This document shows, piece after piece, positions 17,669 to 36,665 of a stretch of DNA of 64,000 nt. Made by a program: the position numbers and the translations under genes. Every line of letters starts with the position of its first letter. Positions within the stretch are counted from its first letter, which is position 1. Below the pieces are notes generated by a model. It was given only the letters and a program-made list of their open reading frames with translations. It made no database searches and was not told where the DNA came from. The stretch is taken from positions 179,822-243,821 of IMG/VR virus record IMGVR_UViG_3300042386_001233. The stretch is one strand, 5' to 3'.

Positions 17669-17750
17669 CGCAAGTCGTTGGTATCAAATAACTTAGAGAA
17701 ATTTCGGGCGCCCCGGCTTGTCGTAAGTCCTTTGAGCATAAGGGTTTGCG
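17669..17750. repeat. 82-bp paired-palindrome element A1
   Basis: 29+24+29 geometry. Confidence 0.9.
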
Positions 17751-17766
17751 TCAAGTGATCTAGACA

Positions 17767-17803
17767 CAAAAAAGAACCGCCACCCATTGCTGAGTGGCGG
17801 CTC
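17767..17803 (-). terminator. intrinsic terminator after DUF932 gene
   Basis: GCCGCCAC/GTGGCGGT stem then TCTTTTTT. Confidence 0.75.
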
Positions 17804-17828
17804 CCGTGTCAACCCCTATTGCGAGGGA

Positions 17829-18779
17829 TTAGAGTGCTTGAGCGAACTGCATGGCCTTTTCCAGAGCCTTGGTGTTGTCGTTCGCGTTCAGTCCGAACCA
17901 CAGGCTGTCGAGCCGATTATCTTCGGTGCGACCCTTATTGTAATTCAGATACTCGTTGTAGCCGTTATACGCGGCCCACCACGTTCCACGCACACCCGTT
18001 GCACTCTGTTTCGGGCCTTCGACCAGAGCCAGAATCTCGTCCATAATGTTACGGGTGCGAGTCTTGATCTGATCGTCCGGCGTACCGTCAATGTCGAGCA
18101 TCACCTTGACATAGCGACGAACGTCGGCCTGATTGAAGTTCTTCGACGCGAGGAACTTGAACTGTTCCGCAGTCGCCTCAAACTCCATGTTGATATTGTC
18201 CATAATATCTCGCACATTTTCCAGATTGGTCTTGCTGGAACGTGTGTGACGAATACGGATCAACTTGGAACCACTAGCCTTGCTATGGGCCATCGCCATA
18301 GTGTTAGCACACACAACGCGGATCGGCGTGTAGCCAACCCGGATAGCGGTCGTGCCATCGTGCGAGTTGCTGAGAAGAATGAACTTCCCAACCTCGTCAC
18401 CCTTCACGATCTCGCTGTTGTCGCGGTTCAGTTGGGCCAGAACCCAAACTTTCTGACCGCTGTGGAGCGAACCGGCAGTATGCAATGCACACTCGCCAGC
18501 GTCCAGAAACGGCTGGAACCAATCGAACGCCTCGCTGTTTTGTAGCGGGGTGTATCGCGGGCCGACAACGCCCAAAATGCTGTCATCGGTCTTGCGATAG
18601 GTCGCACGGGCCGGAACGGGTTGCCCGTCCACCGTGACCAAATCCTTCAGACCAACTTCCCAATCCAAACCGGCGGCAGTCATCGCCTCCGAAACCGTGG
18701 GAGCCTCGTCGAGCTTATTGCCCAGACCGTGCCACGGGGTCGCACCAACAAACATCATCTGTTCAACTGCATGAGCCAT
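17829..18779 (-). CDS. DUF932 family protein (phage/plasmid-like TIGR03299 type)
   Basis: PWHGLG, YTPLQNSEAF, TAGSL..G.KVW, NSHDG, TPIRVVCANT motifs. Confidence 0.85.
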   Translation of the reverse strand: MAHAVEQMMFVGATPWHGLGNKLDEAPTVSEAMTAAGLDWEVGLKDLVTVDGQPVPARATYRKTDDSILGVVGPRYTPLQNSEAFDWFQPFLDAGECALHTAGSLHSGQKVWVLAQLNRDNSEIVKGDEVGKFILLSNSHDGTTAIRVGYTPIRVVCANTMAMAHSKASGSKLIRIRHTRSSKTNLENVRDIMDNINMEFEATAEQFKFLASKNFNQADVRRYVKVMLDIDGTPDDQIKTRTRNIMDEILALVEGPKQSATGVRGTWWAAYNGYNEYLNYNKGRTEDNRLDSLWFGLNANDNTKALEKAMQFAQAL

Positions 18780-18822
18780 AATCATCCCTTTCGTGTTGCT
18801 GTTCAATCGTTCTTATGCACTG

Positions 18823-18851
18823 ATTCTACACTATATTATCGGCAGTGTCAA
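18823..18851 (-). promoter_or_regulatory. sigma70-type promoter TTGACA-17-TAGAAT
   Basis: direct match; CGATA in spacer. Confidence 0.75.
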
Positions 18852-18879
18852 GCGAAAACTTTGGAAAAATTCCGCAGGT

Positions 18880-18961
18880 CGTAAGTGGTTGGCAGATAAG
18901 GACTTACGGCGACCGGGGCCGCCCCGCCTTGTCCTAAGTCTTTGGCTGGTAAGGGTTTAGG
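18880..18961. repeat. 82-bp element A2
   Basis: 29+24+29; supplies TAG stop of PRTase gene. Confidence 0.9.
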
Positions 18962-19437
18962 ATGATCGTCCCAAACTGCTTCTCAAAATATTTAGAATTA
19001 GAAGCATTGAAAGCACACTCCTCACCAAGATAGAAATATGCCCCGATACACTTTGCTCTTGGAGTATCGTCATTGATACTATCCATAATATGTTTGATAG
19101 TATTTCCAGAACAAATCAAATCATCAATAATAACGTATCGAGATGGAGTAACGCCTTCAATAAAAAATTCGCTATATCGTTTTTCATCCTTGCGAACGAT
19201 AATAATATTTTTATTAAGAATCTCTGCAATCTGTGGCACTACCATCAAACCACTTACGCCACAACAGGCAATGCTATCAAAATCATTCTCAATCTTACGC
19301 AGAGAGCAGATAGCCTTGATAATCACACCATTCCTATATTTGTGATTTAACACTCGGCTAGTATGAGCAGCCCCTTGAATTATCTTGCCGTCTGGGGTAC
19401 GCCGAAAATCATCAAGCTCTTGCTGAAAAGCGTTCAT
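18934..19437 (-). CDS. type I phosphoribosyltransferase-like protein
   Basis: YVIIDDLICSGNT PRPP-binding loop. Confidence 0.8.
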   Translation of the reverse strand: MNAFQQELDDFRRTPDGKIIQGAAHTSRVLNHKYRNGVIIKAICSLRKIENDFDSIACCGVSGLMVVPQIAEILNKNIIIVRKDEKRYSEFFIEGVTPSRYVIIDDLICSGNTIKHIMDSINDDTPRAKCIGAYFYLGEECAFNASNSKYFEKQFGTIILNPYQPKT

Positions 19438-19439
19438 AA

Positions 19440-19524
19440 AGTGTGTGGTCGGATTTGAACCGACAATCCCGATAAGAAAGAAAGGAATTAAGAATAGGGT
19501 CTAGTCCCACCTAGATGCACACAC
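19440..19524 (-). tRNA. tRNA-like gene with 13-nt pyrimidine-rich insertion in anticodon loop (pseudo or intron-containing; anticodon ambiguous)
   Basis: GTGTGTG/CACACAC acceptor, TCTA/TAGA D-stem, GTCGG-TTCAAAT-CCGAC T-arm; 20-nt anticodon loop. Confidence 0.6.
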
Positions 19525-19530
19525 AAAAAA

Positions 19531-19707
19531 TCAATCTTCATCTTCCTCAATACTAGGATAATAGTTCTTGCCATAAGATGGAACCTCGTCATCTTCTTCC
19601 TCAAGATCATTCATCCAAGGTTCTTCATCCAGACCAAGATCCTCGGTATTTTCTACCAATTCATCGTAGTCATAGTTATAGCCGTCATAGTAATCTTCAT
19701 ATCTCAT
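19531..19707 (-). CDS. hyperacidic small protein, 58 aa
   Basis: hand-translated; 24 D/E vs 2 K/R; own promoter. Confidence 0.65.
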   Translation of the reverse strand: MRYEDYYDGYNYDYDELVENTEDLGLDEEPWMNDLEEEDDEVPSYGKNYYPSIEEDED

Positions 19708-19731
19708 ATTTCTACTCCCTTTCTTACCTCT

Positions 19732-19759
19732 ATTCTACACCAACAATCGTCACTGTCAA
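19732..19759 (-). promoter_or_regulatory. sigma70-type promoter TTGACA-16-TAGAAT
   Basis: direct match. Confidence 0.6.
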
Positions 19760-19760
19760 G

Positions 19761-19833
19761 TGGGCCCTCGGGGACTCGAACCCCGAACCTATCGGTTAAA
19801 AGCCGAATGCTCTGCCAATTGAGCTAAAGGCCC
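19761..19833 (-). tRNA. tRNA-Lys(TTT)
   Basis: canonical cloverleaf, CTTTTAA loop. Confidence 0.92.
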
Positions 19834-19839
19834 GCCTTA

Positions 19840-20016
19840 TTATTCGGTTACGGTAATTTCCTCGTAAGAATAACTTTGGATATTTTCGGTTGTAAAATCA
19901 TACAGCTTGTCGAAAACATCGACCCAATCAAAATCCTCTTGCATAGAGAGAGTAATTTCGGCCAGAGATTTACCATCCTCAGTCAGAATATCATAGATGC
20001 GAAGGTTCTTCATCAT
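19840..20016 (-). CDS. hypothetical acidic protein
   Basis: ORF after promoter 20039-20067 and RBS. Confidence 0.6.
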   Translation of the reverse strand: MMKNLRIYDILTEDGKSLAEITLSMQEDFDWVDVFDKLYDFTTENIQSYSYEEITVTE

Positions 20017-20038
20017 CACTTTCCTTTCTTGTTCCAAC

Positions 20039-20067
20039 AGTCTACCATACCAATATCGTCCTGTCAA
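20039..20067 (-). promoter_or_regulatory. sigma70-type promoter TTGACA-17-TAGACT
   Basis: direct match; CGATA in spacer. Confidence 0.65.
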
Positions 20068-20086
20068 CACCCAAAACTTTAAGATT

Positions 20087-20134
20087 CTCGCTGACTATCG
20101 CCAAGACCACCAAATCCGTAGGATTAGCAGAAAC
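20087..20134. repeat. 48-bp repeat family B, copy 6
   Basis: gap-free alignment to family. Confidence 0.8.
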
Positions 20135-20137
20135 AAA

Positions 20138-20209
20138 TGACCCCACTGGGTTACGCTCCCAGGTCTCCGGCGTGAAAGGCCAGCGTACTAACTACTATAC
20201 TATGGGGCC
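20138..20209 (-). tRNA. tRNA-Glu(TTC), non-canonical T-loop AGCGTAA
   Basis: cloverleaf, CTGGC-CTTTCAC-GCCGG. Confidence 0.8.
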
Positions 20210-20244
20210 GCACTCGCAACTCAAACATCAGCCTCCGATTAGCA

Positions 20245-20273
20245 ATCATACATCTGTTATCGGCAGTTGTCAA
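20245..20273 (-). promoter_or_regulatory. sigma70-type promoter TTGACA-17-TATGAT
   Basis: direct match; CGATA in spacer. Confidence 0.65.
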
Positions 20274-20291
20274 GGCCAGCCTTTAGAAAAT

Positions 20292-20373
20292 CCTAAGTCT
20301 TTATGGTACAAGCACTTACGTCGAAGGCGGTCCGCCACATTTGTTCTAAGTCCTTTCATACCAACAACTTAGT
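20292..20373. repeat. 82-bp element A3
   Basis: 29+24+29; last base coincides with tRNA-Tyr discriminator. Confidence 0.9.
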
Positions 20374-20454
20374 GGTAGATGCTGGATTCGAACCAGCGAA
20401 GGCAATGCCAGCAGATTTACAGTCTGCCCTCGTTGTCCACTTGAGTAATCTACC
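20373..20454 (-). tRNA. tRNA-Tyr(GTA)
   Basis: cloverleaf with long variable arm. Confidence 0.92.
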
Positions 20455-20458
20455 TAAA

Positions 20459-20545
20459 CGGCTGGAACAGGATTCGAACCTGTGGACGGTTTTAATCGTC
20501 ACATCTTTAGCAAAGATGCGCATTAGACCACTCTGCCATCCAGCC
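20459..20545 (-). tRNA. tRNA-Ser(GCT)
   Basis: cloverleaf, long variable arm, G73. Confidence 0.92.
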
Positions 20546-21224
20546 TCAGTTCTTTTCTATTAGTATTTATCCCGTATTCTTTTGCCCATTTTCTTACAGC
20601 ATTATCTGATACGTCAAATATTGCAGCAGTTTGTGTCCAATTATTCTTTATAAGTAACGCTATTAATTCTTCTTTTGATGGTCTTTCTTTTACTTTTCTT
20701 CTATTTATTTTTGCACAAGTATATGAGCAGTATTTTTTATTGTATGTATTATTGTAACAAACAACACATGCATTGTATTGTTTTTTTTGTTTTTTTCTAG
20801 AGATAGACGATTCTAGATCTACTGCTCTATAGGTCTGTTGTTTTATATTAGTTCTAGATTCTTTATATCCATTTAACTCTTCATGTAGTTCTCTATGACA
20901 GTTAGAGCATAACAATAAACACTTATCCGCTTCTTGTGTTAATTTTTTCCAACTCTGAGTATTTCCATTACTAGACAATCCAAAATCTTTTTCGTTTGGA
21001 TCCTTATGATGGAAATCTAAAGCTGAAACGCACTTATTATAACCGCACTTTTCACACTTTCCACCCTTATAGTCTACTAAATCTTTTTTGAGTCTTTTTC
21101 TTTTTCTACTAACAGCATCCATCCTGCATTTAGTACAACGATAATATCCTCTATTTTCCAGAATAAACTTTACATCACCATGATGTTTACAGTTTCTAGT
21201 TATATACCTATCTTTATTTTCCAT
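20523..21224 (-). CDS. HNH endonuclease with C-terminal HTH-like domain
   Basis: CEKCG..LDFHH..KCLLLCSNCHRELH; 3' end overlaps tRNA-Ser. Confidence 0.85.
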   Translation of the reverse strand: MENKDRYITRNCKHHGDVKFILENRGYYRCTKCRMDAVSRKRKRLKKDLVDYKGGKCEKCGYNKCVSALDFHHKDPNEKDFGLSSNGNTQSWKKLTQEADKCLLLCSNCHRELHEELNGYKESRTNIKQQTYRAVDLESSISRKKQKKQYNACVVCYNNTYNKKYCSYTCAKINRRKVKERPSKEELIALLIKNNWTQTAAIFDVSDNAVRKWAKEYGINTNRKELRLDGRVV

Positions 21225-21242
21225 GACCTATTTTTCTAAAAG

Positions 21243-21314
21243 CTGTGGGAACTGGTTCTGCCCCAGTATCTTACACTTTAACAGAGTGCCGCATTACTGT
21301 TATGCTATCCCACA
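21243..21314 (-). tRNA. tRNA-Asn(GTT), non-canonical T-loop GGCAGAA
   Basis: cloverleaf GCACT-CTGTTAA-AGTGT. Confidence 0.8.
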
Positions 21315-21385
21315 ATGGTATGTCTTGATCGTTATACCATATAATACACCAAAGTTCGATTTTTAATCTGTTTTTCAATTAAATA

Positions 21386-21458
21386 ATCCGCGGGGTGGAT
21401 TTGAACCACCACTCAGCTGATCCAAAGTCAGCCGCTTTGCCAGTTAAGCTACCGCGGA
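21386..21458 (-). tRNA. tRNA-Gln(TTG)
   Basis: cloverleaf, U1-A72. Confidence 0.9.
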
Positions 21459-21463
21459 ACAAG

Positions 21464-21536
21464 AGCCAGTGGCAGGAGTTGCACCCGCGACATTCAAATT
21501 ACAAATTTGACGCTCTGCTGACTGAGCTACACTGGC
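21464..21536 (-). tRNA. tRNA-Thr(TGT)
   Basis: cloverleaf; T-loop TGCAACT. Confidence 0.85.
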
Positions 21537-21552
21537 ATACTACTAATTATAC

Positions 21553-21714
21553 TCAATAGTCCCCATTCTCGCAAGCCCTGCGATTTTCAGCGGATCGGGT
21601 TCGGGTTCGCTTGGGGCGATTGTCCATAACGGTATGACGGTGTTCCTTGTGACCCGTAGGAACTTGCCACTGCGGTCGAACCTTGATTTTGATATGGTTG
21701 CGTTTGGGTCGCAT
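21553..21714 (-). CDS. small basic protein
   Basis: MRPKRNHIKIK...DNRPKRTRTR; overlaps next ORF in another frame. Confidence 0.45.
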   Translation of the reverse strand: MRPKRNHIKIKVRPQWQVPTGHKEHRHTVMDNRPKRTRTRSAENRRACENGDY

Positions 21715-21961
21715 ATCGTCGTTGTTGTGGAGCGTAATCATGCCATTGTCCATTTTCGTGTAAGTAGAAAACCTTGTCAATATTAGGATCGTAAGCCATC
21801 AGACAGTATTGTACCGGATAAACTGGCTTTGTCAATACTTGTTTTTGCTCTTGTGAAGGATGACGCAAAGGTGGAATTTTTATATCACCCTTTTGGTAGT
21901 CCTTAACCCCATTATACGCCAGACCCACCACAGCAATCAATATCCCAATCCACTGGATCAT
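21587..21961 (-). CDS. membrane-anchored/secreted hypothetical protein
   Basis: N-terminal hydrophobic helix, RBS GGCGAG. Confidence 0.55.
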   Translation of the reverse strand: MIQWIGILIAVVGLAYNGVKDYQKGDIKIPPLRHPSQEQKQVLTKPVYPVQYCLMAYDPNIDKVFYLHENGQWHDYAPQQRRYATQTQPYQNQGSTAVASSYGSQGTPSYRYGQSPQANPNPIR

Positions 21962-22051
21962 TCTCTCGCCCTTTGTTGATTCCCTTCTCGTTCTCATATC
22001 CTTATTATCGACCAATCACCACCCTAAACTTTAGGAGTTTTCTGGAATTTC

Positions 22052-22133
22052 TCTAAGTCCGCATCCTGCAACAACTTACGTCAAATCCGGCCGCCCCCGC
22101 TCGCCCTAAGTGCTTATGCAGTAAGGGTTTGCG
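22052..22133. repeat. 82-bp element A4
   Basis: 29+24+29. Confidence 0.9.
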
Positions 22134-22304
22134 GAAAGTGTTACATATCCACTTCTGTCCTAATATACTCCATATCCTTCTCACACTTTGTGCAAAAGGG
22201 TTCGCCATTTTCGGAATAGAACCAAGGTTCAACATAAACTAGATTATCACAATCTGCACATTCCCACAAGTGCCTTACTTTTTTATCGTCTATTTTTGTC
22301 CACA

Positions 22305-23140: not shown

Positions 23141-23169
23141 ATTCTACAGTATCTTATCGACAAATGCAA
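23141..23169 (-). promoter_or_regulatory. sigma70-type promoter TTGCAT-17-TAGAAT
   Basis: direct match; CGATA in spacer. Confidence 0.6.
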
Positions 23170-23188: not shown

Positions 23189-23270
23189 TCTAAAGTCTTA
23201 TGAGTCAAGGACTTACGACCGATCCGTCCGCTCGCCCTTGCCGTAAGTCTTTTACTGACAAGGATTTATA
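23189..23270. repeat. 82-bp element A5
   Basis: 29+24+29. Confidence 0.9.
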
Positions 23271-24621: not shown

Positions 24622-24650
24622 ATTCTACACTATGGTATCGGCATAGTCAA
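24622..24650 (-). promoter_or_regulatory. sigma70-type promoter TTGACT-17-TAGAAT
   Basis: direct match; CGATA in spacer. Confidence 0.7.
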
Positions 24651-24678: not shown

Positions 24679-24760
24679 TGCAAGTTGTTGTGAAATAAGG
24701 ACTTACGACGAACCGGGGCGGCCGGGCTTGTCCTAAGTGCTTATGCAGTAAGGGTTTATG
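24679..24760. repeat. 82-bp element A6
   Basis: 29+24+29; site-2 N19 identical to A4. Confidence 0.9.
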
Positions 24761-25375: not shown

Positions 25376-25404
25376 ATTCTACAGTATAGTATCGTCATTG
25401 TCAA
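25376..25404 (-). promoter_or_regulatory. sigma70-type promoter TTGACA-17-TAGAAT
   Basis: direct match; CGATA in spacer. Confidence 0.75.
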
Positions 25405-25443: not shown

Positions 25444-25525
25444 CCTAAGTTGTTTGCTGATAAGGACTTATGTCAAATTCGGCCCGCCCCGTTTGCCGTA
25501 AGTCTTTACAGCATAGGGGTTTAGG
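25444..25525. repeat. 82-bp element A7
   Basis: 29+24+29; abuts stop of bL12-like gene. Confidence 0.9.
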
Positions 25526-26644: not shown

Positions 26645-26673
26645 ATCTTACACTACTATTATCGACAAGTCAA
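26645..26673 (-). promoter_or_regulatory. sigma70-type promoter TTGACT-17-TAAGAT
   Basis: direct match; CGATA in spacer. Confidence 0.6.
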
Positions 26674-26701: not shown

Positions 26702-26783
26702 CGTAAAGTCTTTAGAGATAAGGACTTACGTCGAAACCGGCCCGCCCGATTTGCTCTAAGTCGTTATGTAGCGGTAACTTATG
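26702..26783. repeat. 82-bp element A8
   Basis: 29+24+29; supplies TAG stop of 26756-26890. Confidence 0.9.
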
Positions 26784-28422: not shown

Positions 28423-28451
28423 ATTCTACATCTATTATCGTCACTTGTCAA
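28423..28451 (-). promoter_or_regulatory. sigma70-type promoter TTGACA-17-TAGAAT
   Basis: direct match; CGATA in spacer. Confidence 0.75.
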
Positions 28452-28490: not shown

Positions 28491-28572
28491 CGTAACCCTA
28501 TGATACACAAGCACTTACATCAAAGTCGGCCGCCCGCCCTATCCCTAAGTTCTTTAAGGATAAGGACTTACG
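28491..28572. repeat. 82-bp element A9
   Basis: 29+24+29. Confidence 0.9.
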
Positions 28573-29508: not shown

Positions 29509-29537
29509 ATTCTACACTACTATTATCGACCTGTCAA
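29509..29537 (-). promoter_or_regulatory. sigma70-type promoter TTGACA-17-TAGAAT
   Basis: direct match; CGATA in spacer. Confidence 0.75.
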
Positions 29538-29566: not shown

Positions 29567-29648
29567 CGTAAAGTGTTGTGAGATAAAGACTTACGACTCG
29601 CGGGGCGGGCCGACCTCGCCCTAAGTCCTTTGGTGTCAAAGAGTTAGG
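29567..29648. repeat. 82-bp element A10
   Basis: 29+24+29. Confidence 0.9.
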
Positions 29649-30451: not shown

Positions 30452-30480
30452 ATTCTACTATCTATTATCGTCAATTGCAA
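30452..30480 (-). promoter_or_regulatory. sigma70-type promoter TTGCAA-17-TAGAAT
   Basis: direct match; CGATA in spacer. Confidence 0.65.
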
Positions 30481-30516: not shown

Positions 30517-30598
30517 CGTAAGTCTTTATTCGATAAGGAGTTACAACAATCTGGGGCGCCCGCCCTTACCCCAAGTTCTTTGGAGTTAAGGACTTGCG
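30517..30598. repeat. 82-bp element A11
   Basis: 29+24+29; abuts TGA stop of nuclease gene. Confidence 0.9.
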
Positions 30599-31144
30599 TC
30601 AAGCTTTCACTTTCTGCTTTTTCTTTTTTGTTACGGGCATCTTGAGCTTTTTCCAAGCTGTTCCTTCAAGATTACGAAAAGAAGAAGTAGTAACATCGAT
30701 CTGGCTTGCCTTAGAACGATGATTACCAACAAACTCCCTCGCTGTCGCTTTGGTCATCCATCGGACTTTAGGCCCATTAGGAGTAACATATACCAGAAAA
30801 AGAATATCAAACTTAGACAATTGCACATGCTTGAATGAAAATTTATATCTAGTAATTTTCTTAGTCCTGCTACTAACCAGAGGAGTAGCTAAAGCTGATT
30901 TCACTTCAATCCTAACATCCTTATTCAAGGTAATGTCGTGGGAATGAGATCCACCATGATAGCTTGTCTTGTGCTTCTTCAGCAGTCCATCCCTAACCAT
31001 CTTTTCAATTGCATGACCACGAAACTGCGACCCCATCTTAGAGAGTTTATATGCTGATTCGCTCTTGGATGGAGAGAAAATAGCAGGCCGCTTCAATCCC
31101 TTGAGTTCTGGAAGCACACGACTCAAATCTTTCATCGTGAACAT
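30599..31144 (-). CDS. PD-(D/E)XK restriction-endonuclease-like protein
   Basis: GHAIE ... HDI ... RIEVKS catalytic pattern. Confidence 0.6.
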   Translation of the reverse strand: MFTMKDLSRVLPELKGLKRPAIFSPSKSESAYKLSKMGSQFRGHAIEKMVRDGLLKKHKTSYHGGSHSHDITLNKDVRIEVKSALATPLVSSRTKKITRYKFSFKHVQLSKFDILFLVYVTPNGPKVRWMTKATAREFVGNHRSKASQIDVTTSSFRNLEGTAWKKLKMPVTKKKKQKVKA

Positions 31145-31168
31145 AGCTTGTCCTCCTTTGGTTGAGTC

Positions 31169-31196
31169 ATTCTACAGGAGTATCGGCTATTGTCAA
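31169..31196 (-). promoter_or_regulatory. sigma70-type promoter TTGACA-16-TAGAAT
   Basis: direct match; CGATA in spacer. Confidence 0.65.
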
Positions 31197-31223
31197 TAGA
31201 TTCGGTAAGAAATTCTCTTTCGT

Positions 31224-31305
31224 CACAATCCTATGCAAGATAAGGACTTACGTCAAATCCGGCTCCCCGCGTCGGCCCTAAGTGCTTGAACACAAAGGGT
31301 TTACG
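31224..31305. repeat. 82-bp element A12
   Basis: 29+24+29. Confidence 0.9.
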
Positions 31306-31917: not shown

Positions 31918-32036
31918 CTTTCACTCTCTCTTTCTCTATCTCTTATATCGACAAGTATAGCATAGAAACTTTAGGTGTCAAGCAGAAAATTTTGAAAAAA
32001 AAGAAAAGATTTTTTGGCACGACATCTGCTATGAGT

Positions 32037-32118
32037 CATAAGTCCTTACTGCTAAAGGATTTACGTCAAATCCGGCCCGCCCCGCCAGCCCTAAGTGCTT
32101 ACGCACAAAGGGTTTAGG
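32037..32118. repeat. 82-bp element A13
   Basis: 29+24+29. Confidence 0.9.
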
Positions 32119-32126
32119 GCGAGTGC

Positions 32127-32519: not shown

Positions 32520-32535
32520 TGTTCTTTCCTTTTAA

Positions 32536-32811
32536 TTAGTCGTTATATGGCCCGTCTTCATTGTAGTCCACAAATCCCACAGCCTCATCGGCGTGGAAAT
32601 CTTCTACTCCATCGTCACCATAGTAACCGTAATCCTCGTCGGTTCCCCATCCAGCGGAAGCCAACGCAGATTCAGCATCACCATCCATACTATCATCAAA
32701 CGAATCATCAGAATCATTCTCCAGGTCATCATTTCCAGCCCAATAATCGTTAGTACGATCATCAGCGTCGATACCGTAAAAATCTTCAAGATCGTCATAT
32801 TCGTAGCTCAT
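32536..32811 (-). CDS. hyperacidic protein (DNA-mimic candidate)
   Basis: 33 D/E, 1 R, 0 K in 91 aa. Confidence 0.65.
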   Translation of the reverse strand: MSYEYDDLEDFYGIDADDRTNDYWAGNDDLENDSDDSFDDSMDGDAESALASAGWGTDEDYGYYGDDGVEDFHADEAVGFVDYNEDGPYND

Positions 32812-32877
32812 GATCAATCCCTCACGATGGTAGTAACGTAAAACAAACCCACATAGCCCACAACAAAAGCAATTGCA

Positions 32878-33051
32878 CTAAGCATTAGTATACTCCTCGG
32901 GAACGAATTCGTCAACAGCACCTACAACGTCAGCCCAATCCCAAAAATTGACTTCCACACTGGGGTCATCGATAGGCTCGACCATCGGCTCAACAATCCC
33001 CGCTTCGGCCATGTCGTTCAGAATATCGTTGATCTCGTCGAAGTTCAGCAT
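32878..33051 (-). CDS. acidic small protein
   Basis: 16 D/E, no K/R in 57 aa. Confidence 0.6.
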   Translation of the reverse strand: MLNFDEINDILNDMAEAGIVEPMVEPIDDPSVEVNFWDWADVVGAVDEFVPEEYTNA

Positions 33052-33088
33052 GATTCTGGTTCCTGTGGTTTCCGTTCGTGATGCTGCG

Positions 33089-33117
33089 ATTATACTCTTA
33101 TTATCGGCCAGCGTCAA
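33089..33117 (-). promoter_or_regulatory. sigma70-type promoter TTGACG-17-TATAAT
   Basis: direct match; CGATA in spacer. Confidence 0.75.
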
Positions 33118-33179
33118 GCAGAAACTTGGAAAATTCCAGAATATAATTTCATGCCAAAGACGAAAAATCTTTTAGTTAA

Positions 33180-33261
33180 CGTAAAGTCTTGGTGCATAAA
33201 CACTTACGCTTCGCGGGGGCGGCCGGACTCGACGTAAGTCCTTACAGGTGAAGGAGATACG
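33180..33261. repeat. 82-bp element A14
   Basis: 29+24+29; contains stop of 33242-33430. Confidence 0.85.
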
Positions 33262-33430
33262 TCATAGTGCAGCCAATAATAAAACACACCCCCCACAATA
33301 TGTAGTCACTCACTTTCATCATTTTCCTCCATATACATGATATTTGACATACTAGCGTACAGTACAATACCACAAATATAACCGAAAGCAACACTAATAA
33401 AGTCGAACTGATACATCCGTGTATCTCCAT
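33242..33430 (-). CDS. small membrane protein (start uncertain)
   Basis: hydrophobic ORF. Confidence 0.4.
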   Translation of the reverse strand: MEIHGCISSTLLVLLSVIFVVLYCTLVCQISCIWRKMMKVSDYILWGVCFIIGCTMTYLLHL

Positions 33431-33443
33431 TTTGTTTAAGTGG

Positions 33444-33632
33444 TCAATCCCCGTATCCTACCCAGAAATCATCACCCTTATCATTCTTCATAAGAGTAAA
33501 ACCCCTGGCCCGCATATTCTCATACTCGTTTATTCTCTGCCAAACTTCTCCCACAATAGTGAGAAAATAAGCAAAGAACAAAACCCCACACATAACCGCC
33601 ACCCAGACCCACACCATAATAAAATCGCTCAT
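33444..33632 (-). CDS. small membrane protein
   Basis: GGAGG RBS, TM helix. Confidence 0.6.
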   Translation of the reverse strand: MSDFIMVWVWVAVMCGVLFFAYFLTIVGEVWQRINEYENMRARGFTLMKNDKGDDFWVGYGD

Positions 33633-33634
33633 AT

Positions 33635-33838
33635 TCAAGCCTCCGGTTGAGTAGAGATAGCAGTTAGATTCCCGCACTGCTCAAGATAGCACGAACGATA
33701 CTTACCCTCACCCAATTTCACAATCATCAAATGACCCTTGGGCTTATCATAAACCCTACGAACCTCACCCCTGAAGCTCTTACCCTTATAATCAAAAGCT
33801 ACCCAATCATGTCTCTGTGGCAACGTGAGATTGTCCAT
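33635..33838 (-). CDS. small WYL/Sm-like protein
   Basis: VAFDYKGKSFRGEV...GKYRSCYLE. Confidence 0.5.
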   Translation of the reverse strand: MDNLTLPQRHDWVAFDYKGKSFRGEVRRVYDKPKGHLMIVKLGEGKYRSCYLEQCGNLTAISTQPEA

Positions 33839-33919
33839 ACTTTTCCTCTTTGTTGTTAGTTCTCGTTTTCCCTATACCTATTATCGACATTCTACCATAT
33901 CAACCTTTAGCCTGCAATA

Positions 33920-33937
33920 CCTTACAGTATCGATAGG
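33920..33937. promoter_or_regulatory. 18-bp palindromic operator family C, copy 1
   Basis: CCTTAC-AGTATC-GATAGG, 2 bp upstream of -35. Confidence 0.55.
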
Positions 33938-33944
33938 TTGGCCT

Positions 33945-34157
33945 CTAACCCCTCTTAGGGGCTACGAGATCAACCCTCACGATTTCCTTGGTGTCGAAAC
34001 CCTGAGAACGCATATACTGGTAAACCGCACGGTCTGAACCGCAACGGTAAACTCTATAGGCTTTCCCATTCTTCATATGCACGATATGATCGTAAATATA
34101 AATAGAGGGAAGCGAACGGGTGAAACTTTCGACTGAAACTGACTCTCTCATCTTCAA
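33945..34157 (-). CDS. hypothetical protein
   Basis: ORF after perfect promoter. Confidence 0.55.
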   Translation of the reverse strand: MKMRESVSVESFTRSLPSIYIYDHIVHMKNGKAYRVYRCGSDRAVYQYMRSQGFDTKEIVRVDLVAPKRG

Positions 34158-34180
34158 CTCTCTTTCTTTCTTGTCCTACG

Positions 34181-34209
34181 ATTATACATCTATTATCGTC
34201 CAGTGTCAA
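34181..34209 (-). promoter_or_regulatory. sigma70-type promoter TTGACA-17-TATAAT
   Basis: perfect consensus; CGATA in spacer. Confidence 0.8.
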
Positions 34210-34230
34210 GCTATTTCTAGAGAAAAGAAT

Positions 34231-34248
34231 CCTTACAATATCGTAAGG
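34231..34248. promoter_or_regulatory. family C operator, copy 2
   Basis: CCTTAC-AATATC-GTAAGG. Confidence 0.7.
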
Positions 34249-34249
34249 T

Positions 34250-34331
34250 TGCAAGTTGTTGCGTCATAAGGAGTTACATCAAATCGGGGCGGTCGCGTTT
34301 GCCCTAAGTCCTTATAGGGTAACGCTTTAGG
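34250..34331. repeat. 82-bp element A15
   Basis: 29+24+29. Confidence 0.9.
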
Positions 34332-34364
34332 TCAACTGCTATATGTTTGTGCAGTAGTGATCGT

Positions 34365-34739
34365 TCATTCATCACTCTTGAAGCTGAACGGGCTGAGTTC
34401 CAGATGGGCGACCACACCATACTGTTTGGTCAGTTCCTCGATACGTTCACGGCTTCCCGGCTTTCCAACCGGAACGATCATGGTATCCTCACCCCCCACA
34501 TAGCGGGGGTCAGCCTTTTCCTTGCGAACCTTGCCAATGTTCTTCAGTGCGGTACGATTGAATTTGAGTACCTTTTCGGTCACAACGTAACGCTTGTGGT
34601 CAGTCACACCGTGAACGTAGTCAACGTCGATGATGCACTGCTCATCGGTCACTTCGTGGCGAACTGGAATCGCGATACCCTTGAAGATCATACGGGCTTG
34701 ACGCTTGGCATTTTCGATGATTGGATACTTGGTTTTCAT
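34365..34739 (-). CDS. hypothetical protein
   Basis: GC-rich ORF; VGKPGSRERIE motif. Confidence 0.7.
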   Translation of the reverse strand: MKTKYPIIENAKRQARMIFKGIAIPVRHEVTDEQCIIDVDYVHGVTDHKRYVVTEKVLKFNRTALKNIGKVRKEKADPRYVGGEDTMIVPVGKPGSRERIEELTKQYGVVAHLELSPFSFKSDE

Positions 34740-34779
34740 TGTCTTTTTCTCTAAGGGTCTATCGTTCTCTTGTGCGATC

Positions 34780-34808
34780 ATTATACCAAACTGATTTTAT
34801 CGTGTCAA
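34780..34808 (-). promoter_or_regulatory. sigma70-type promoter TTGACA-17-TATAAT
   Basis: perfect consensus. Confidence 0.8.
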
Positions 34809-34826
34809 CCTTACAATACCGTTAGG
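34809..34826. promoter_or_regulatory. family C operator, copy 3
   Basis: CCTTAC-AATACC-GTTAGG directly abutting -35. Confidence 0.65.
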
Positions 34827-35007
34827 CCCAGGGATGGCCGTAGGCATCAACTGCGGGAGCTAGCTCATCGTCCGAAAAATATGCGTTCATACTTTCGGTT
34901 ACGGTTACTTCCCACACATTACCCTCATCGTATTCCCAGCCTACGATTTTGCCAAACTTTTTCTCTTTTCCCCACATGAACGATACGCTGTCACCAATTT
35001 CAAACAT
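34822..35007 (-). CDS. small SH3/KOW-like hypothetical protein
   Basis: MFEIGDSV..GKIVG.. Confidence 0.6.
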   Translation of the reverse strand: MFEIGDSVSFMWGKEKKFGKIVGWEYDEGNVWEVTVTESMNAYFSDDELAPAVDAYGHPWA

Positions 35008-35047
35008 TCTTTTCTCTCTTTCTTTCTTCTCTATGTCTTATATCGAC

Positions 35048-35076
35048 ATTATACCATGCTCATCTTGAGCTTGCAA
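35048..35076 (-). promoter_or_regulatory. sigma70-type promoter TTGCAA-17-TATAAT
   Basis: direct match; CGATA just downstream of -10. Confidence 0.7.
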
Positions 35077-35163
35077 GAGAAATCTAGAAATTTTATTGTC
35101 AAGAATTTTTGACAAAAGAATCGTCTATTTTCTATCCTATTGGCACAGCATTTGCTAGGTGAA

Positions 35164-35245
35164 CGTAAAGTGTTGCAGCATAAGGACTTACGTCGATCCC
35201 GGCCCGCCCGCCTCGCTGTAAGTCCTTTACAGACAAGGCTTTATG
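35164..35245. repeat. 82-bp element A16
   Basis: 29+24+29; abuts TAA stop. Confidence 0.9.
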
Positions 35246-35545
35246 TTAACTCACCACCATACGATCCTCAAACGGTGTGCCGTCTTTTAGGTACCATTCG
35301 TAGTTCTTCTGGTATACCTGTACGGGCGAATACTGGTTGATACGCTTCTTAGTGGTGTGCGTATGCCATCCACCACTATTGAGCATAACAGTATCGTCGG
35401 GATAAATCACCACGACATTCGTACCATGCAACTCTATTGCAACGCTACCATCGGCCTGGATATAGGCATAGGTATTGTTGCCAACCTTGCGAGTATCCTT
35501 ATTAGTCTTACCACGAACCATCTTTACTGCTTCAAAGTGTGTCAT
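35246..35545 (-). CDS. conserved phage hypothetical protein
   Basis: LHGTNVV..LNSGGWHTHTTKKRIN motif. Confidence 0.75.
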   Translation of the reverse strand: MTHFEAVKMVRGKTNKDTRKVGNNTYAYIQADGSVAIELHGTNVVVIYPDDTVMLNSGGWHTHTTKKRINQYSPVQVYQKNYEWYLKDGTPFEDRMVVS

Positions 35546-35806
35546 TTTGTTTACCAGCTTTCGCTAATGATTCCTAGTAATTGTTGAAGAAACTGTAAAA
35601 CTTCTTTGATATTGTATGTAGCATAATCTACATAACCATCAGGCAGATACCTAGACATATTCCCTCAGTCGTGAAGAATGGATTGAATAGCGTTACCCAC
35701 CTCGTGGGCGGTGTACGAGATGAAACCAGCAAAAGCAATCAAGGCAAACAACTGAACGTATTCGATAGTCGTAATCATTGGGATTCCTTTTCTTTCTTGT
35801 GTTCTT

Positions 35807-35835
35807 ATTCTACACCTATTATCGACCAACGTCAA
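35807..35835 (-). promoter_or_regulatory. sigma70-type promoter TTGACG-17-TAGAAT
   Basis: direct match; CGATA in spacer. Confidence 0.7.
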
Positions 35836-35855
35836 GCTCTAGCAATAGTTTTCTT

Positions 35856-35873
35856 CCTTACAATATCGTAAGG
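35856..35873. promoter_or_regulatory. family C operator, copy 4
   Basis: identical to copy 2. Confidence 0.7.
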
Positions 35874-35875
35874 TT

Positions 35876-35957
35876 CATAAGCCTATATGAGATAAGGACT
35901 TACGTCAGATGCGGGCGCCCGGCCTCGCCCTAAGTGTTTATAGGGTAAGGCTTTAGG
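35876..35957. repeat. 82-bp element A17
   Basis: 29+24+29; abuts TGA stop. Confidence 0.9.
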
Positions 35958-36173
35958 TCATGAGGCGTGAATGAAGACCTTTTCGCTTACTGTACGGTTA
36001 GTCACTGTCACGATCCAATTCTTTCCGCTACCATCCTCACGCATGATACCATTGATAAGGCCCACATGAGCGTTACCCTTTGGGTCGAGCACGCAGTGAT
36101 ACTTACCAGCTCGCATAGCAGAAAAAATCTTATCAAGGTTGTTCGTCACAGTTTTGTAGTTAGTCTGAAGCAT
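35958..36173 (-). CDS. hypothetical protein
   Basis: ORF with RBS after promoter. Confidence 0.7.
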   Translation of the reverse strand: MLQTNYKTVTNNLDKIFSAMRAGKYHCVLDPKGNAHVGLINGIMREDGSGKNWIVTVTNRTVSEKVFIHAS

Positions 36174-36237
36174 CTTTTTCCTTTTCTTTCTTGTGTTGTT
36201 TCTATTATAGGTTATCGGTTAGGGCGTTGTCAATACC

Positions 36238-36480
36238 TTAGTAGTAAAGAAAATCTTCCAGAATGTTTCCGTCCCGGTCAACGGTGATTCCCTCACCCTC
36301 ATCACCCATCGGAAAAAAGTCTCCAATGCAGGCGTTTCCGTCGCTCATTTCATAGTAGTGAAAAGCCTCTTCGAGCAACTCACCACCGATGCGAGCAATA
36401 CCAACAAGAGTTTCGGGCATGGTCGAATCAGCACCATAGAGGAAGTTTTCGAGTTCGTTGCGATTGTTGATGGTGATCAT
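36238..36480 (-). CDS. acidic hypothetical protein
   Basis: ORF with RBS after promoter. Confidence 0.65.
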   Translation of the reverse strand: MITINNRNELENFLYGADSTMPETLVGIARIGGELLEEAFHYYEMSDGNACIGDFFPMGDEGEGITVDRDGNILEDFLYY

Positions 36481-36562
36481 TTTCTTGTCCTCTTGTTTAT
36501 CGTTCTCTTGTTCTTATATCGACATTATACAGAGTATTCTTTAGCTTGCAAGCGAAAAGTTT

Positions 36563-36580
36563 CCTTGCATTTTCGTAAGG
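36563..36580. promoter_or_regulatory. family C operator, copy 5
   Basis: CCTTGC-ATTTTC-GTAAGG. Confidence 0.55.
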
Positions 36581-36583
36581 TTT

Positions 36584-36665
36584 CGCAAAGACAAACACCA
36601 TAAGGACTTACATCAAACGCGGGCTTCGTCATTCGTCGTAAGTCTTTATGTCACAAGGACTTGCA
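36584..36665. repeat. 82-bp element A18 (last copy)
   Basis: 29+24+29. Confidence 0.88.

What the first reader, a model, noticed from the sequence alone, without database searches (positions are those of the whole stretch)
17669..36665. Array of ~17 gene cassettes delimited by an invariant 82-bp paired-palindrome element (top candidate novel system)
Seen: 18 same-orientation copies (starts 17669, 18880, 20292, 22052, 23189, 24679, 25444, 26702, 28491, 29567, 30517, 31224, 32037, 33180, 34250, 35164, 35876, 36584), roughly one per kb. Each is exactly 29+24+29 bp with no indels despite heavy substitution. Each 29-mer is an 11-7-11 inverted repeat (ideal CGTAAGTCCTT-N7-AAGGACTTACG), and the GC-rich 24-bp spacer puts the two site centres 53 bp apart, about 5 helical turns. 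Modules typically read element > A/T-rich UP tract > sigma70 promoter > 1-6 small genes or tRNAs > element. Established: 11-13-bp inverted arms around a 6-8-bp core is the architecture of tyrosine-recombinase sites (Xer/dif, lox, lambda att core). Repeat-bounded early modules are known as PeSL cassettes in T4-like phages, but those are promoter stem-loops, not double palindromes. Inference: this is a phage cassette-shuffling or acquisition platform (integron/pdif-like), or a phased array of nucleoprotein sites that organises or protects the first-injected DNA. No recombinase is in this window.
Basis: partly seen in the sequence, partly recalled or inferred. Interest (0 to 1): 0.93.

Follow-up and report, generated by a model that had tools for sequence, protein, structure and literature searches.

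The report
Phased four-site operator array in phage
Eighteen copies of a fixed-length, four-half-site DNA motif sit in helical register upstream of the early promoters of an uncultivated ~240-kb freshwater phage; they look like docking sites for an unidentified regulatory protein, and they also mark the points where whole gene modules are gained, lost and re-ordered among related phages.

Summary
There are 18 copies at the stated starts, each an 11-7-11-24-11-7-11 unit of 82 bp, and none elsewhere in the window. The genes and promoters lie on the minus strand.

The element is family-wide. I found 586 copies in 97 IMG/VR contigs plus the window, and 570 of them have no indel.

It is not a hairpin. 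In 489 unique copies, no pairing model (two local stems, or nested long-range) shows more base-pairing than column frequencies predict. The palindromy comes from four independently conserved half-sites (TTGA-CGTAAGTCCTT), which is the signature of protein binding to duplex DNA.

The distance from the element to the -35 hexamer is quantised at about 18, 28.5, 39.5, 50.5 and 62 bp, a period of about 10.5-11 bp. Lone single palindromes occur either at the same upstream spacings or at +3..+31 of a promoter.

Among relatives, modules are inserted, deleted and transposed as whole element-to-element units.

No recombinase gene and no recognisable DNA-binding protein was found in the window. No paper in the searched library and no Rfam family matches.

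Best reading: a phased operator array for an unknown, probably phage-encoded, protein that co-ordinates control of sigma-70 early promoters. It doubles as PeSL-like recombination boundaries. An integron/pdif-like mechanism is not supported but not excluded.

The parts
36584..36665 (-). element copy 1 (first in the direction of transcription), after the S8 protease gene
35876..35957 (-). element copy 2
   Evidence: best HMM score, 69.7 bits
35164..35245 (-). element copy 3
34250..34331 (-). element copy 4
33180..33261 (-). element copy 5
32037..32118 (-). element copy 6
31224..31305 (-). element copy 7, upstream boundary of the indel module k
30517..30598 (-). element copy 8, downstream boundary of the indel module k
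29567..29648 (-). element copy 9
28491..28572 (-). element copy 10
26702..26783 (-). element copy 11
25444..25525 (-). element copy 12
24679..24760 (-). element copy 13, directly after tRNA-Asp
23189..23270 (-). element copy 14, absent at this position in most relatives; an HNH gene is inserted next to it
22052..22133 (-). element copy 15, the only one without a clear consensus promoter downstream
20292..20373 (-). element copy 16, directly after tRNA-Tyr
18880..18961 (-). element copy 17
17669..17750 (-). element copy 18 (last), after the only strong intrinsic terminator
17569..17597 (-). lone single palindrome (half-element) at about +3..+31 of promoter 17607-17635, conserved in relatives
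17607..17635 (-). sigma-70-type promoter after copy 18 (TTGGCA-N17-TATACT)
18823..18851 (-). promoter after copy 17, 28 bp from the element
20245..20273 (-). promoter after copy 16, 18 bp from the element
23141..23169 (-). promoter after copy 14 (TTGCAT...TAGAAT), 19 bp from the element
   Evidence: read from the sequence
24622..24650 (-). promoter after copy 13, 28 bp from the element
25376..25404 (-). promoter after copy 12, 39 bp from the element
26645..26673 (-). promoter after copy 11 (TTGACT...TAAGAT), 28 bp from the element
   Evidence: read from the sequence
28423..28451 (-). promoter after copy 10, 39 bp from the element
29509..29537 (-). promoter after copy 9, 29 bp from the element
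30452..30480 (-). promoter after copy 8
31169..31196 (-). promoter after copy 7 (drives module k), 27 bp from the element
31954..31981 (-). promoter after copy 6
33089..33117 (-). promoter after copy 5, 62 bp from the element
34181..34209 (-). promoter after copy 4 (12 of 12 consensus), 40 bp from the element
35048..35076 (-). promoter after copy 3
35807..35835 (-). promoter after copy 2, 40 bp from the element
36524..36551 (-). promoter after copy 1
17772..17805 (-). the only convincing intrinsic terminator in the array (15-bp stem plus T run), after the DUF932 gene
30522..31233 (-). module k (promoter, 181-aa gene and one element): present here and in L090, absent as an exact element-to-element unit in at least 7 relatives

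Best explanation
Each element is a platform for protein binding on double-stranded DNA, not a folded nucleic acid.

Anatomy. It holds four roughly 15-bp half-sites (consensus TTGA-CGTAAGTCCTT). They are arranged as two 29-bp palindromes whose centres lie 53 bp apart, about five helical turns and so on the same face. A G+C-only core (GG-SSSS-CC) sits on the overall dyad axis.

Most likely occupant. Two dimers, or a tetramer, of one sequence-specific protein. It is probably phage-encoded, because the motif is confined to this phage lineage.

Placement. The element lies directly after the stop codon of one early transcription unit. It sits in helical register (about 18, 28.5, 39.5, 50.5 bp) upstream of the UP-like tract and near-consensus sigma-70 promoter of the next unit.

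Inferred role. The bound protein meets RNA polymerase stereospecifically and sets the activity of all ~18 early units together. The promoters are already near consensus, and a lone palindrome covers +3..+31 of the last promoter. So shut-off, repression or insulation of read-through is more likely than activation.

Side effect that is observed. The same element-plus-promoter unit recurs at every module boundary, so recombination between copies deletes, inserts and transposes whole self-expressed modules, as described for PeSL cassettes of T4-type phages.

Shown: the anatomy, the absence of covariation, the phasing, the lone operator-like copies, and the module indels and re-ordering.
Inferred: that a protein binds, what that protein is, and the direction of regulation.
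For: - Copies: 18 in the window and none elsewhere.
- Family: 586 copies in 97 IMG/VR contigs plus the window; 570 have no indel over 82 bp.
- Conservation: all four arms conserve C-N-TAA-N4-TT independently, while the N7 cores carry almost no information.
- No covariation (my script): pairing equals expectation from column frequencies for every model. Mutual information (MI) is at most 0.09 bit for putative pairs, against up to 0.75 bit for adjacent columns.
- No covariation (dedicated tool, 148 copies): 74.3% paired versus 74.3 +/- 0.3 in shuffles for local hairpins, and 72.6% versus 73.0% for the nested model. There is a systematic G-G clash at positions 28/55.
- The dyad extends to TTGA|...|TCAA.
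- Promoter association: 64% of elements have a sigma-70-like promoter within 200 nt downstream, against 4-9% in control directions. In the window the figure is 17 of 18.
- Phasing: the element-to--35 distance is quantised at 17-18, 28-29, 39-40, 50-51 and ~62 bp. Rayleigh R is about 0.5 at a period of 10.5-11.5 bp, p about 1e-16, on 142 cluster representatives. Spacing differences within families defined by the same downstream gene show a similar but weaker pattern.
- Lone palindromes: 24 found, 0 in shuffles. They lie either at +3..+31 of a promoter (window 17569-17597, conserved in 6 relatives) or upstream of promoters at the same 28/39/50 spacings.
- Terminators: no excess of intrinsic terminators in the array (13 found, 14.6 expected); only one is convincing.
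- Module indels and transpositions are bounded by elements.
- The element is essentially absent from 185,579 species-representative bacterial and archaeal genomes, apart from phage contigs binned into MAGs.
Against: - No binding protein was identified. Pfam and PHROGs find no DNA-binding domain in array or flanking small proteins. A model of the most conserved array protein matched nothing.
- About a dozen equally strong promoters inside modules lack an element, so it is not needed for promoter function.
- Part of the spacing quantisation could reflect shared descent of element-plus-promoter units. My clustering cannot join copies of different length.
- The G+C-only centre and the asymmetry between the two outer arms are unexplained.
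- Abutting a stop codon with no terminator also fits a pure roadblock or insulator role.
- The 18-bp centre spacing of half-sites within each palindrome is unusual for classical helix-turn-helix dimers (my own knowledge).
Confidence: 0.55

Rival explanations
1. Protein roadblock or insulator. The same kind of bound protein, or a host nucleoid protein, mainly stops RNA polymerase arriving from the upstream module. It would replace the missing intrinsic terminators and shield each promoter from read-through, rather than regulating initiation.
For: - The element starts at, or overlaps, the upstream stop codon: 106 of 319 cases at offset 0 or -1, and 15 use the internal TAA.
- There is only one convincing terminator in 19 kb, despite about 30 co-directional strong promoters.
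- Four half-sites spread over 82 bp would make a long-lived obstacle.
Against: - A roadblock needs no helical register with the next promoter, yet the spacing is quantised.
- Lone palindromes keep the same spacings upstream of promoters.
- The two roles are not exclusive.
Confidence: 0.15
2. Passive recombination cassette (pure PeSL analogue). The repeats persist because they promote homologous exchange of modules, or spread selfishly, and no dedicated binding protein exists.
For: - Module k is an exact repeat-to-repeat indel.
- Modules are transposed between lineages.
- Ends of blastn alignment segments are enriched 3-4 fold at element edges.
- Homology breakpoints are scattered over arms, centre and edges, as expected for homologous exchange.
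- PeSL precedent: PMC2839356, PMC4122927.
Against: Homologous recombination cannot explain several features: four-fold dyad symmetry, 97% indel-free length over 586 copies, conservation limited to specific triplets while the N7 cores drift, helical phasing to promoters, or the operator-positioned lone palindromes.
Confidence: 0.12
3. Site-specific recombination sites (integron attC-like, Xer/pdif-like or res-like). A dedicated recombinase encoded elsewhere in the 244-kb genome would capture and shuffle promoter-bearing cassettes.
For: - The 11-7-11 arm/core geometry fits tyrosine-recombinase core sites (my own knowledge).
- Cassettes are bounded by the element.
- A frequent homology junction lies at the promoter-side edge of the element, positions 84-89.
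- Only 64 kb of the roughly 244-kb genome could be inspected.
Against: - N7 cores are unconserved between copies, so strand exchange would meet heterology.
- There is no single-strand folding signature, against an attC mode.
- The palindrome length is odd, which argues against the 2-bp symmetric cut of a serine recombinase.
- Breakpoints are not confined to one position.
- No integrase or resolvase domain occurs in any window ORF of 150 aa or more.
- Cassettes carry their own promoters.
- Phasing to promoters and the operator-position half-element are not expected for recombination sites.
Confidence: 0.08
4. Structured RNA or single-stranded DNA element: a terminator, an RNase processing site or a cruciform formed by the palindromic arms.
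For: - The consensus can be drawn as two 11-bp hairpins or as one long nested hairpin.
- The position at gene ends resembles terminators and REP elements.
Against: - There is no excess pairing or covariation on either model in 148-489 copies.
- Central arm positions pair in only 21-58% of copies.
- There is no consistent T run.
- There is no Rfam match.
- The wobble bias points to opposite strands for the two hairpins.
Confidence: 0.04

Closest known systems
PeSL (promoter-early stem-loop) regulatory cassettes of T4-type phages (Arbiol et al. 2010, PMC2839356; Comeau et al. 2014, PMC4122927)
   Same: - A repeated composite intergenic motif that begins at the stop codon of the upstream gene.
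- It contains an A/T-rich tract and a strong sigma-70-like early promoter, and precedes small ORFan genes in a plastic region.
- Indels, replacements and shuffling between related phages have their breakpoints in the motifs.
   Different: - The non-promoter part of a PeSL is a G/C-rich stem-loop. It works as a terminator and sits at variable positions relative to the promoter.
- Here it is a fixed 82-90-bp unit of four half-sites with no base-pair covariation. It always lies upstream of the promoter and is phased to it by whole helical turns.
- The phage is not T4-like. Its terminase is only about 25% identical to those of Bacillus siphoviruses, and its portal has no match.
Upstream operator pairs of phage transcription switches, for example phi29 protein p4 sites (my own knowledge, not tested here)
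   Same: - Inverted-repeat sites whose recognition triplets lie about two helical turns apart.
- They occur in pairs and sit upstream of sigma-A/sigma-70 promoters at face-of-helix-dependent positions.
- There the bound protein contacts RNA polymerase to repress strong early promoters.
   Different: - phi29 has one small control region, not about 18 copies spread over 19 kb.
- There is no sequence similarity.
- No p4-like protein was detected here.
Integron attC sites / pdif (XerC-XerD) modules
   Same: - Imperfect palindromes that recur at the boundary of every small gene cassette in a one-directional array.
- An 11-N-11 arm geometry.
   Different: - attC sites are conserved in folded structure rather than sequence, and their cassettes lack promoters.
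- pdif sites are 11-6-11 with distinct XerC and XerD arms.
- Here sequence rather than structure is conserved, the cores vary, cassettes carry promoters, and no recombinase was seen.
Halovirus HF2 intergenic repeats that carry promoters (PMC8707807, seen)
   Same: Families of short intergenic repeats that mark transcription-unit starts in a virus genome.
   Different: Those are archaeal promoters in 29- and 58-bp repeats. I did not read that paper's body, so no dyad four-site architecture or phasing could be compared.

Membership tests
PeSL cassettes (T4-type phages) | Strong sigma-70-like early promoter with an A/T-rich upstream tract inside the repeated motif | tested here: met
   17 of 18 window elements are followed within 18-90 bp by TTGACA-N16-18-TAnAAT-type promoters. 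Family-wide the figure is 64%, against 4-9% in controls.
PeSL cassettes (T4-type phages) | Stable stem-loop that acts as a terminator or attenuator | tested here: not met
   No covariation or excess pairing. Terminator-like sites are not above chance.
PeSL cassettes (T4-type phages) | Located in plastic regions, with indel and replacement breakpoints in the motif | tested here: met
   Module k indel, lineage-specific module orders, and enrichment of alignment ends at element edges.
PeSL cassettes (T4-type phages) | Circular single-module DNAs formed by exchange between neighbouring motifs | not testable with these tools
   This needs raw reads or PCR on phage DNA.
Integron attC | Site defined by a folded single strand (R''/L''-L'/R' pairing, extrahelical bases), so structure is conserved more than sequence | tested here: not met
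   Sequence is conserved in each arm independently. Pairing equals column expectation.
Integron attC | Promoterless cassettes expressed from a common promoter, with an adjacent tyrosine-recombinase integrase gene | tested here: not met
   Every module has its own promoter. No integrase domain occurs in window ORFs of 150 aa or more. The rest of the genome was not seen.
Xer/dif-like or other tyrosine-recombinase core site | Two inverted 11-13-bp arms around a 6-8-bp core | tested here: met
   11-7-11 in both palindromes.
Xer/dif-like or other tyrosine-recombinase core site | Core (overlap) sequence shared by recombining partners | tested here: not met
   N7 columns carry 0.03-0.5 bit (positions 12-18 and 65-70); the last column, 71, reaches 0.70. 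Even orthologous copies differ there.
Xer/dif-like or other tyrosine-recombinase core site | Cognate recombinase present | tested here: inconclusive
   None found in the 64-kb window. About 180 kb of the genome and the host were not examined.
Transcription-factor operator (dimer-of-dimers type) | Dyad-symmetric half-sites conserved by sequence, with fixed internal spacing | tested here: met
   Four half-sites; 570 of 586 copies have no indel.
Transcription-factor operator (dimer-of-dimers type) | Stereospecific position relative to promoters | tested here: met
   Spacing to the -35 hexamer has a period of about 10.5-11.5 bp. Lone palindromes lie at +3..+31 or at the same upstream spacings.
Transcription-factor operator (dimer-of-dimers type) | An identified cognate DNA-binding protein | tested here: inconclusive
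   No DNA-binding domain was recognised in array or neighbouring proteins. Binding itself is not testable here.
Rfam RNA families | Match to a curated covariance model | tested here: not met
   Only tRNAs were found in window 13000-39000 at E up to 0.1.

The most novel reading that the evidence does not exclude
The 82-bp elements are the attachment sites of a dedicated recombination system encoded elsewhere in these ~240-kb phage genomes. This would be a phage 'integron' that captures, excises and re-orders promoter-bearing early-gene cassettes. The promoter-side edge of the element (positions ~82-88) would be the exchange point. The four half-sites would bind a recombinase tetramer that also represses the adjacent promoters, as resolvases do at res sites.
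Probability: 0.08. Interest if true: 0.9.

Novelty: new variant of a known kind. Interest (0 to 1): 0.6.

Why it matters
Early ('host-takeover') regions of large virulent phages are the least understood and most plastic parts of their genomes. This lineage of uncultivated freshwater phages, with contigs up to 244 kb, wires about 18 early transcription units to one highly constrained four-site motif. That implies a single unknown regulator which could switch the whole early programme.

The motif gives a ready bait for finding that protein. The promoters are consensus sigma-70, so element-plus-promoter units can be tested in laboratory E. coli.

The same motif marks the joints at which modules are exchanged. 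The locus is therefore a natural system for asking how regulatory repeats drive modular evolution beyond the T4-type PeSL case.

The strict length conservation together with free N7 and spacer sequence is also a clean data set for inferring protein-DNA geometry from sequence alone.

Tried and rejected
- Close cultured relatives: none. Megablast of the array, tblastn of the portal, and blastn of one element against 50,697 phage records found nothing. The terminase has only distant Bacillus siphovirus hits.
- RNA or ssDNA structure: rejected by the covariation counts and by Rfam.
- Host operator or prophage origin: a scan of 185,579 genomes gave 5 stretches. Two are phage contigs binned into freshwater MAGs (metagenome-assembled genomes). 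Two belong to an unrelated G+C-rich intergenic repeat in a gammaproteobacterial MAG. One is a simple hairpin.
- Binder identification: Pfam and PHROGs on about 60 window proteins found no helix-turn-helix, ribbon-helix-helix or recombinase domain. The AlphaFold2 model of the most widespread array protein (34365-34781) had pLDDT 70 and pTM 0.33, with no Foldseek hit at E<=0.001. Sequence searches of three small candidates against the PDB found nothing.
After filtering, it shows scattered breakpoints plus a peak at the promoter-side edge. This cannot separate homologous from site-specific exchange, because conserved columns are uninformative and push estimates towards the edges.
- Literature: searches for the motif strings and for similar repeat architectures found only the PeSL papers and a halovirus case.
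- Consensus fold of the second repeat family (52-57 nt): no structure on the minus strand.

Full report
**1. Is it there?**

Yes. The repeat finder recovers the copies at all 18 stated starts, in one 82-bp register. The inner-arm pattern (AAGGACTTACG-N24-CNTAAGT, up to 3 mismatches) hits 35 times on both strands, against 0.16 expected from shuffles.

An HMM built from the 18 copies finds those 18 in the 64-kb window and nothing else. Each scores on both strands because the unit is nearly its own reverse complement. The minus strand always scores higher.

Printed on the minus strand, the layout reads:
- stop codon of the upstream gene
- 11-bp arm, N7, 11-bp arm
- 24-bp G+C-rich spacer
- 11-bp arm, N7, 11-bp arm
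- 18-90 bp of A/T-rich, UP-like DNA
- promoter TTGACA-N17-(TG)TAGAAT
- ribosome-binding site and genes

All genes and tRNAs of the array are on the minus strand.

**2. Surroundings**

The promoter scan finds about 30 strong sigma-70-type promoters (at least 10 of 12 consensus) on the minus strand of 17.2-37 kb, and one on the plus strand. Seventeen of the 18 elements have a promoter just downstream. About a dozen more promoters lie inside modules without an element.

Terminator-like hairpins are not above chance (13 found, 14.6 expected). Only one is convincing, at 17772-17805, after the DUF932 gene.

Array G+C content is 40-46%, against 33-35% in most of the flanking DNA.

Identifiable genes:
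- In the array: DUF932, a phosphoribosyltransferase-like protein, DUF7227/GP88, DUF7249, a Kyano_Gp96-like protein, and two HNH endonucleases.
- Upstream in transcription (higher coordinates): an S8 protease, a GlmS-like enzyme and sugar-nucleotide enzymes.
- On the plus strand from about 47 kb: a sigma-like protein, terminase, portal and tail-fibre genes.

No integrase or resolvase domain occurs in any ORF of 150 aa or more.

There is no close cultured relative. The terminase is about 25% identical to those of Bacillus siphoviruses, and the portal has no hit.

**3. The element is a family-wide feature**

They come from 97 contigs of up to 243.8 kb. Five loci are near-identical to the window. 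L054 and L107 place the window at roughly the last 64 kb of IMGVR_UViG_3300042386_001233.

The HMM finds 586 copies in these loci plus the window. Of these, 570 have no indel across all 82 positions, and 489 are unique. In large contigs the copies form one array of roughly 20-25 kb.

A scan of 185,579 species-representative bacterial and archaeal genomes found only 5 stretches. Two are phage contigs binned into freshwater MAGs (Lake Lanier; Candidatus Planktophila), and the rest are unrelated. The motif is therefore phage-specific, and the habitat is probably fresh water.

**4. Sequence versus structure**

Per-column conservation shows the same skeleton in all four arms: C-N-TAA-N4-TT, or its complement. 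The inner arms are strongest. The N7 columns carry 0.03-0.5 bit, with the last one reaching 0.7. A G+C-only core sits at positions 38-45, on the overall dyad axis.

Flanks extend the symmetry to TTGA|...|TCAA. The TGA is used as the upstream gene's stop codon. Among upstream ORFs of at least 60 codons ending nearby, 106 of 319 stop at offset 0 or -1, and 15 use the TAA at positions 3-5.

For every pairing model I compared observed Watson-Crick frequency with the product of column frequencies. The models were two local hairpins, outer-with-outer, inner-with-inner, and the spacer. Observed equals or falls below expected everywhere. Mutual information is at most 0.09 bit, while adjacent columns reach 0.75 bit.

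The dedicated tool, run on 148 copies, agrees:
- Local hairpins: 74.3% paired, against 74.3 +/- 0.3 in shuffles.
- Nested model: 72.6% against 73.0%.

The inner arms have a systematic G-G clash at positions 28/55, and central arm positions pair in only 21-58% of copies. The palindromy is therefore a by-product of four half-sites that each match one consensus. That is the signature of a protein reading duplex DNA. It is not the signature of an RNA or single-stranded DNA fold, a terminator, or an attC-type site. Rfam has no match.

The TAA/TTA triplets lie at positions 4, 26, 57 and 79. These are 22, 31 and 22 bp apart, or 0, 2.1, 5.0 and 7.1 turns, so all are on one face of the helix (read; inference).

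**5. Relation to promoters**

Family-wide, 64% of elements have a promoter-like site within 200 nt downstream, against 9% pointing the other way and 4% upstream.

Measured to the base, the distance from the element's end to the -35 hexamer is quantised at 17-18, 28-29, 39-40, 50-51 and about 62 bp. I collapsed spacer-plus-promoter sequences into 166 clusters. For the 142 clusters with distances up to 100 bp, the Rayleigh statistic peaks at R of about 0.5 for periods of 10.5-11.5 bp, with p about 1e-16.

The window's own non-orthologous modules show the same classes: 18, 19, 27-29 (five modules), 39-40 (four modules) and 61-62.

Within families defined by the same downstream gene, spacing is mostly conserved. 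Where it differs, the differences show weak peaks at 9-11 and 21 bp. The caveat is that element-plus-promoter units share ancestry, so not all points are independent.

In the 28-bp class the intervening DNA resembles an UP element. The near palindrome is then centred at about -79 and the far one at about -132. These positions are inferred from the spacings.

**6. Lone palindromes**

A two-half-site scan finds 24 single palindromes outside full elements, and none in shuffled loci. They fall into two groups:
- One group starts 4-9 bp after the -10 hexamer. The window example, 17569-17597, lies behind promoter 17607-17635. It is conserved in six relatives at 76-86% overall identity, while its N7 core drifts.
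- The other group lies upstream of promoters at the same 28/39/50 spacings.

The 29-bp palindrome is therefore the functional unit. At one promoter it occupies a classical repressor position.

**7. Modules among relatives**

Mapping window proteins onto the loci shows the array bounded by the same genes in relatives: the S8 protease on one side and the low-G+C 'D' genes on the other. Close relatives keep the same order of modules a to q, but the array is not identical.

- **Module k.** Window 30522-31233 holds a promoter, a 181-aa gene and one element. It is absent from L052, L078, L099, L089, L083, L037 and L045. In each, the alignments join inside the two flanking elements.
- **Element 14.** The copy at 23189 is missing between genes d and e in most relatives. 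In the window it lies next to a plus-strand HNH endonuclease gene, 23325-23915; the ~680 bp holding that gene do not align in L064 or L088, the relatives that keep this element.
- **Two alternative module orders.** One lineage (L048, L077, L014, L118) reads p, n, (n o j), m, b, (e d), (c h g), f. Another (L001, L020, L029, L103, L104) has o and p swapped. In both, the moved pieces are whole modules.
- **Alignment ends.** The ends of blastn alignment segments pile up 3-4 fold at the two edges of the element.
- **Breakpoints.** A change-point analysis of pairwise homology places breakpoints in all parts of the element, with a peak at the promoter-side edge. Clear chimeras exist. For example, L015:5542 and L082:4595 are identical up to the G+C core and unrelated after it. 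The method cannot distinguish homologous from site-specific exchange.

Its proposed enzymology does not gain support.

**8. Mechanism**

The best-supported reading is a phased operator array. One sequence-specific protein binds each element as two dimers on one face of the DNA. It meets RNA polymerase or its alpha subunits at the adjacent promoter in a face-dependent way. It thereby controls all early units together.

Three points make shut-off or insulation more likely than activation:
- The promoters are near consensus and carry UP-like tracts.
- A half-element covers +3..+31 of the last promoter.
- Intrinsic terminators are missing.

The binding protein is unknown. No DNA-binding domain was recognised in about 60 window proteins. 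The one structure model I made was uninformative.

Module exchange at the repeats is an observed consequence. It parallels PeSL cassettes, which combine a promoter with a stem-loop terminator, undergo homologous exchange and form mini-circles.

**9. Comparison and novelty**

Functionally the locus resembles PeSLs. It fails their defining stem-loop feature.

It resembles attC and pdif arrays in layout. It fails on folded structure, core conservation, promoterless cassettes and a visible recombinase.

In working principle it resembles upstream operator pairs such as the phi29 p4 sites (my own knowledge). It is unrelated to them in sequence and far larger in copy number.

No paper in the searched library and no Rfam family describes it.

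I rate it a new variant of a known kind. It is a robust, well-constrained new cis-element family with a testable mechanism.

Noticed in passing
window 13932-13983, 14232-14283, 15182-15233, 16060-16111, 17476-17527, 20084-20140: A second repeat family of 52-57 nt, six copies at 63-81% identity. It lies in the low-G+C region downstream of the array, with one copy next to tRNA-Glu. On the minus strand the conserved blocks are CTAAT, GATTTGG and ATAGTCAGCGAG. No consensus RNA fold was found on the minus strand. It may be a promoter or binding motif of a later temporal class.
   Followed up: partly
window 23325-23915 (+) and 20523-21224 (-): Two free-standing HNH endonuclease genes of the same PHROG families (2255/3106). 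The plus-strand one runs antisense to the array. The relatives that keep element 14 (L064, L088) align through the element, and every relative printed resumes at ~23950, so the ~680 bp holding this gene are unaligned there. The other sits among the tRNA genes.
   Followed up: partly
window 47275-47952 (+): A 225-aa protein with weak matches to Sigma-70 region 2 (Pfam E=1.5e-4) and to a PHROG sigma factor. It lies at the head of the plus-strand structural operon and may be a phage sigma factor for late genes.
   Followed up: no
window array promoters, e.g. 18823-18851, 28423-28451, 30133-30161, 34181-34209: The promoter spacer itself is conserved (TTGACA-N4-CGATAAT-N6/7-TAGAAT). This holds in promoters with and without an upstream element. 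It suggests common descent or a second recognition feature.
   Followed up: no
window 21243-21314 and 27669-27741 (-): Two extra tRNA-like matches in Rfam (49.7 and 35.4 bits) that ARAGORN did not call.
   Followed up: no
window ~34231-34248; similar sequences just downstream of elements 35876 and 36584: A small hairpin (CCTTAC-N6-GTAAGG, then a T-rich run) directly after three elements. It re-uses the CTTACG/CGTAAG part of the half-site. It may be a weak terminator or an extra site.
   Followed up: no
L122:1930-2050 and L123:6435-6550 (Gammaproteobacteria MAG, 1.67-Mb contig): A G+C-rich intergenic repeat, seen at two places in that chromosome. It combines CCTAAGTCCTTAT-N6-CCGGAATTTACG units with an AAGGACTTAGG...CCTAAGTCCTT hairpin. 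It shares the half-site core with the phage element but has a different architecture.
   Followed up: partly
window 30599-31144 (-): The gene of the indel module k encodes a basic 181-aa protein (pI 10.6) with no Pfam or PHROG hit. By eye it contains a D...E-V-K stretch reminiscent of PD-(D/E)XK nucleases. It could be a mobile nuclease gene.
   Followed up: no
loci L001-L120: Many IMG/VR contigs begin or end inside the array. This suggests that the repeats, or strain-level variation in module content, break metagenome assemblies there.
   Followed up: no
window 18001-36000 versus most of the flanking DNA: Array G+C content is 40-46%, against 33-35% in most of the flanking DNA, although the array is conserved across relatives. 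The cause is unknown; early-gene codon usage or older horizontal origin are possibilities.
   Followed up: no
window 35246-35545 (-): An array protein matches Pfam Kyano_Gp96 (E=5.7e-11), a family named from T4-like cyanophages. This hints at gene exchange with aquatic myoviruses.
   Followed up: no
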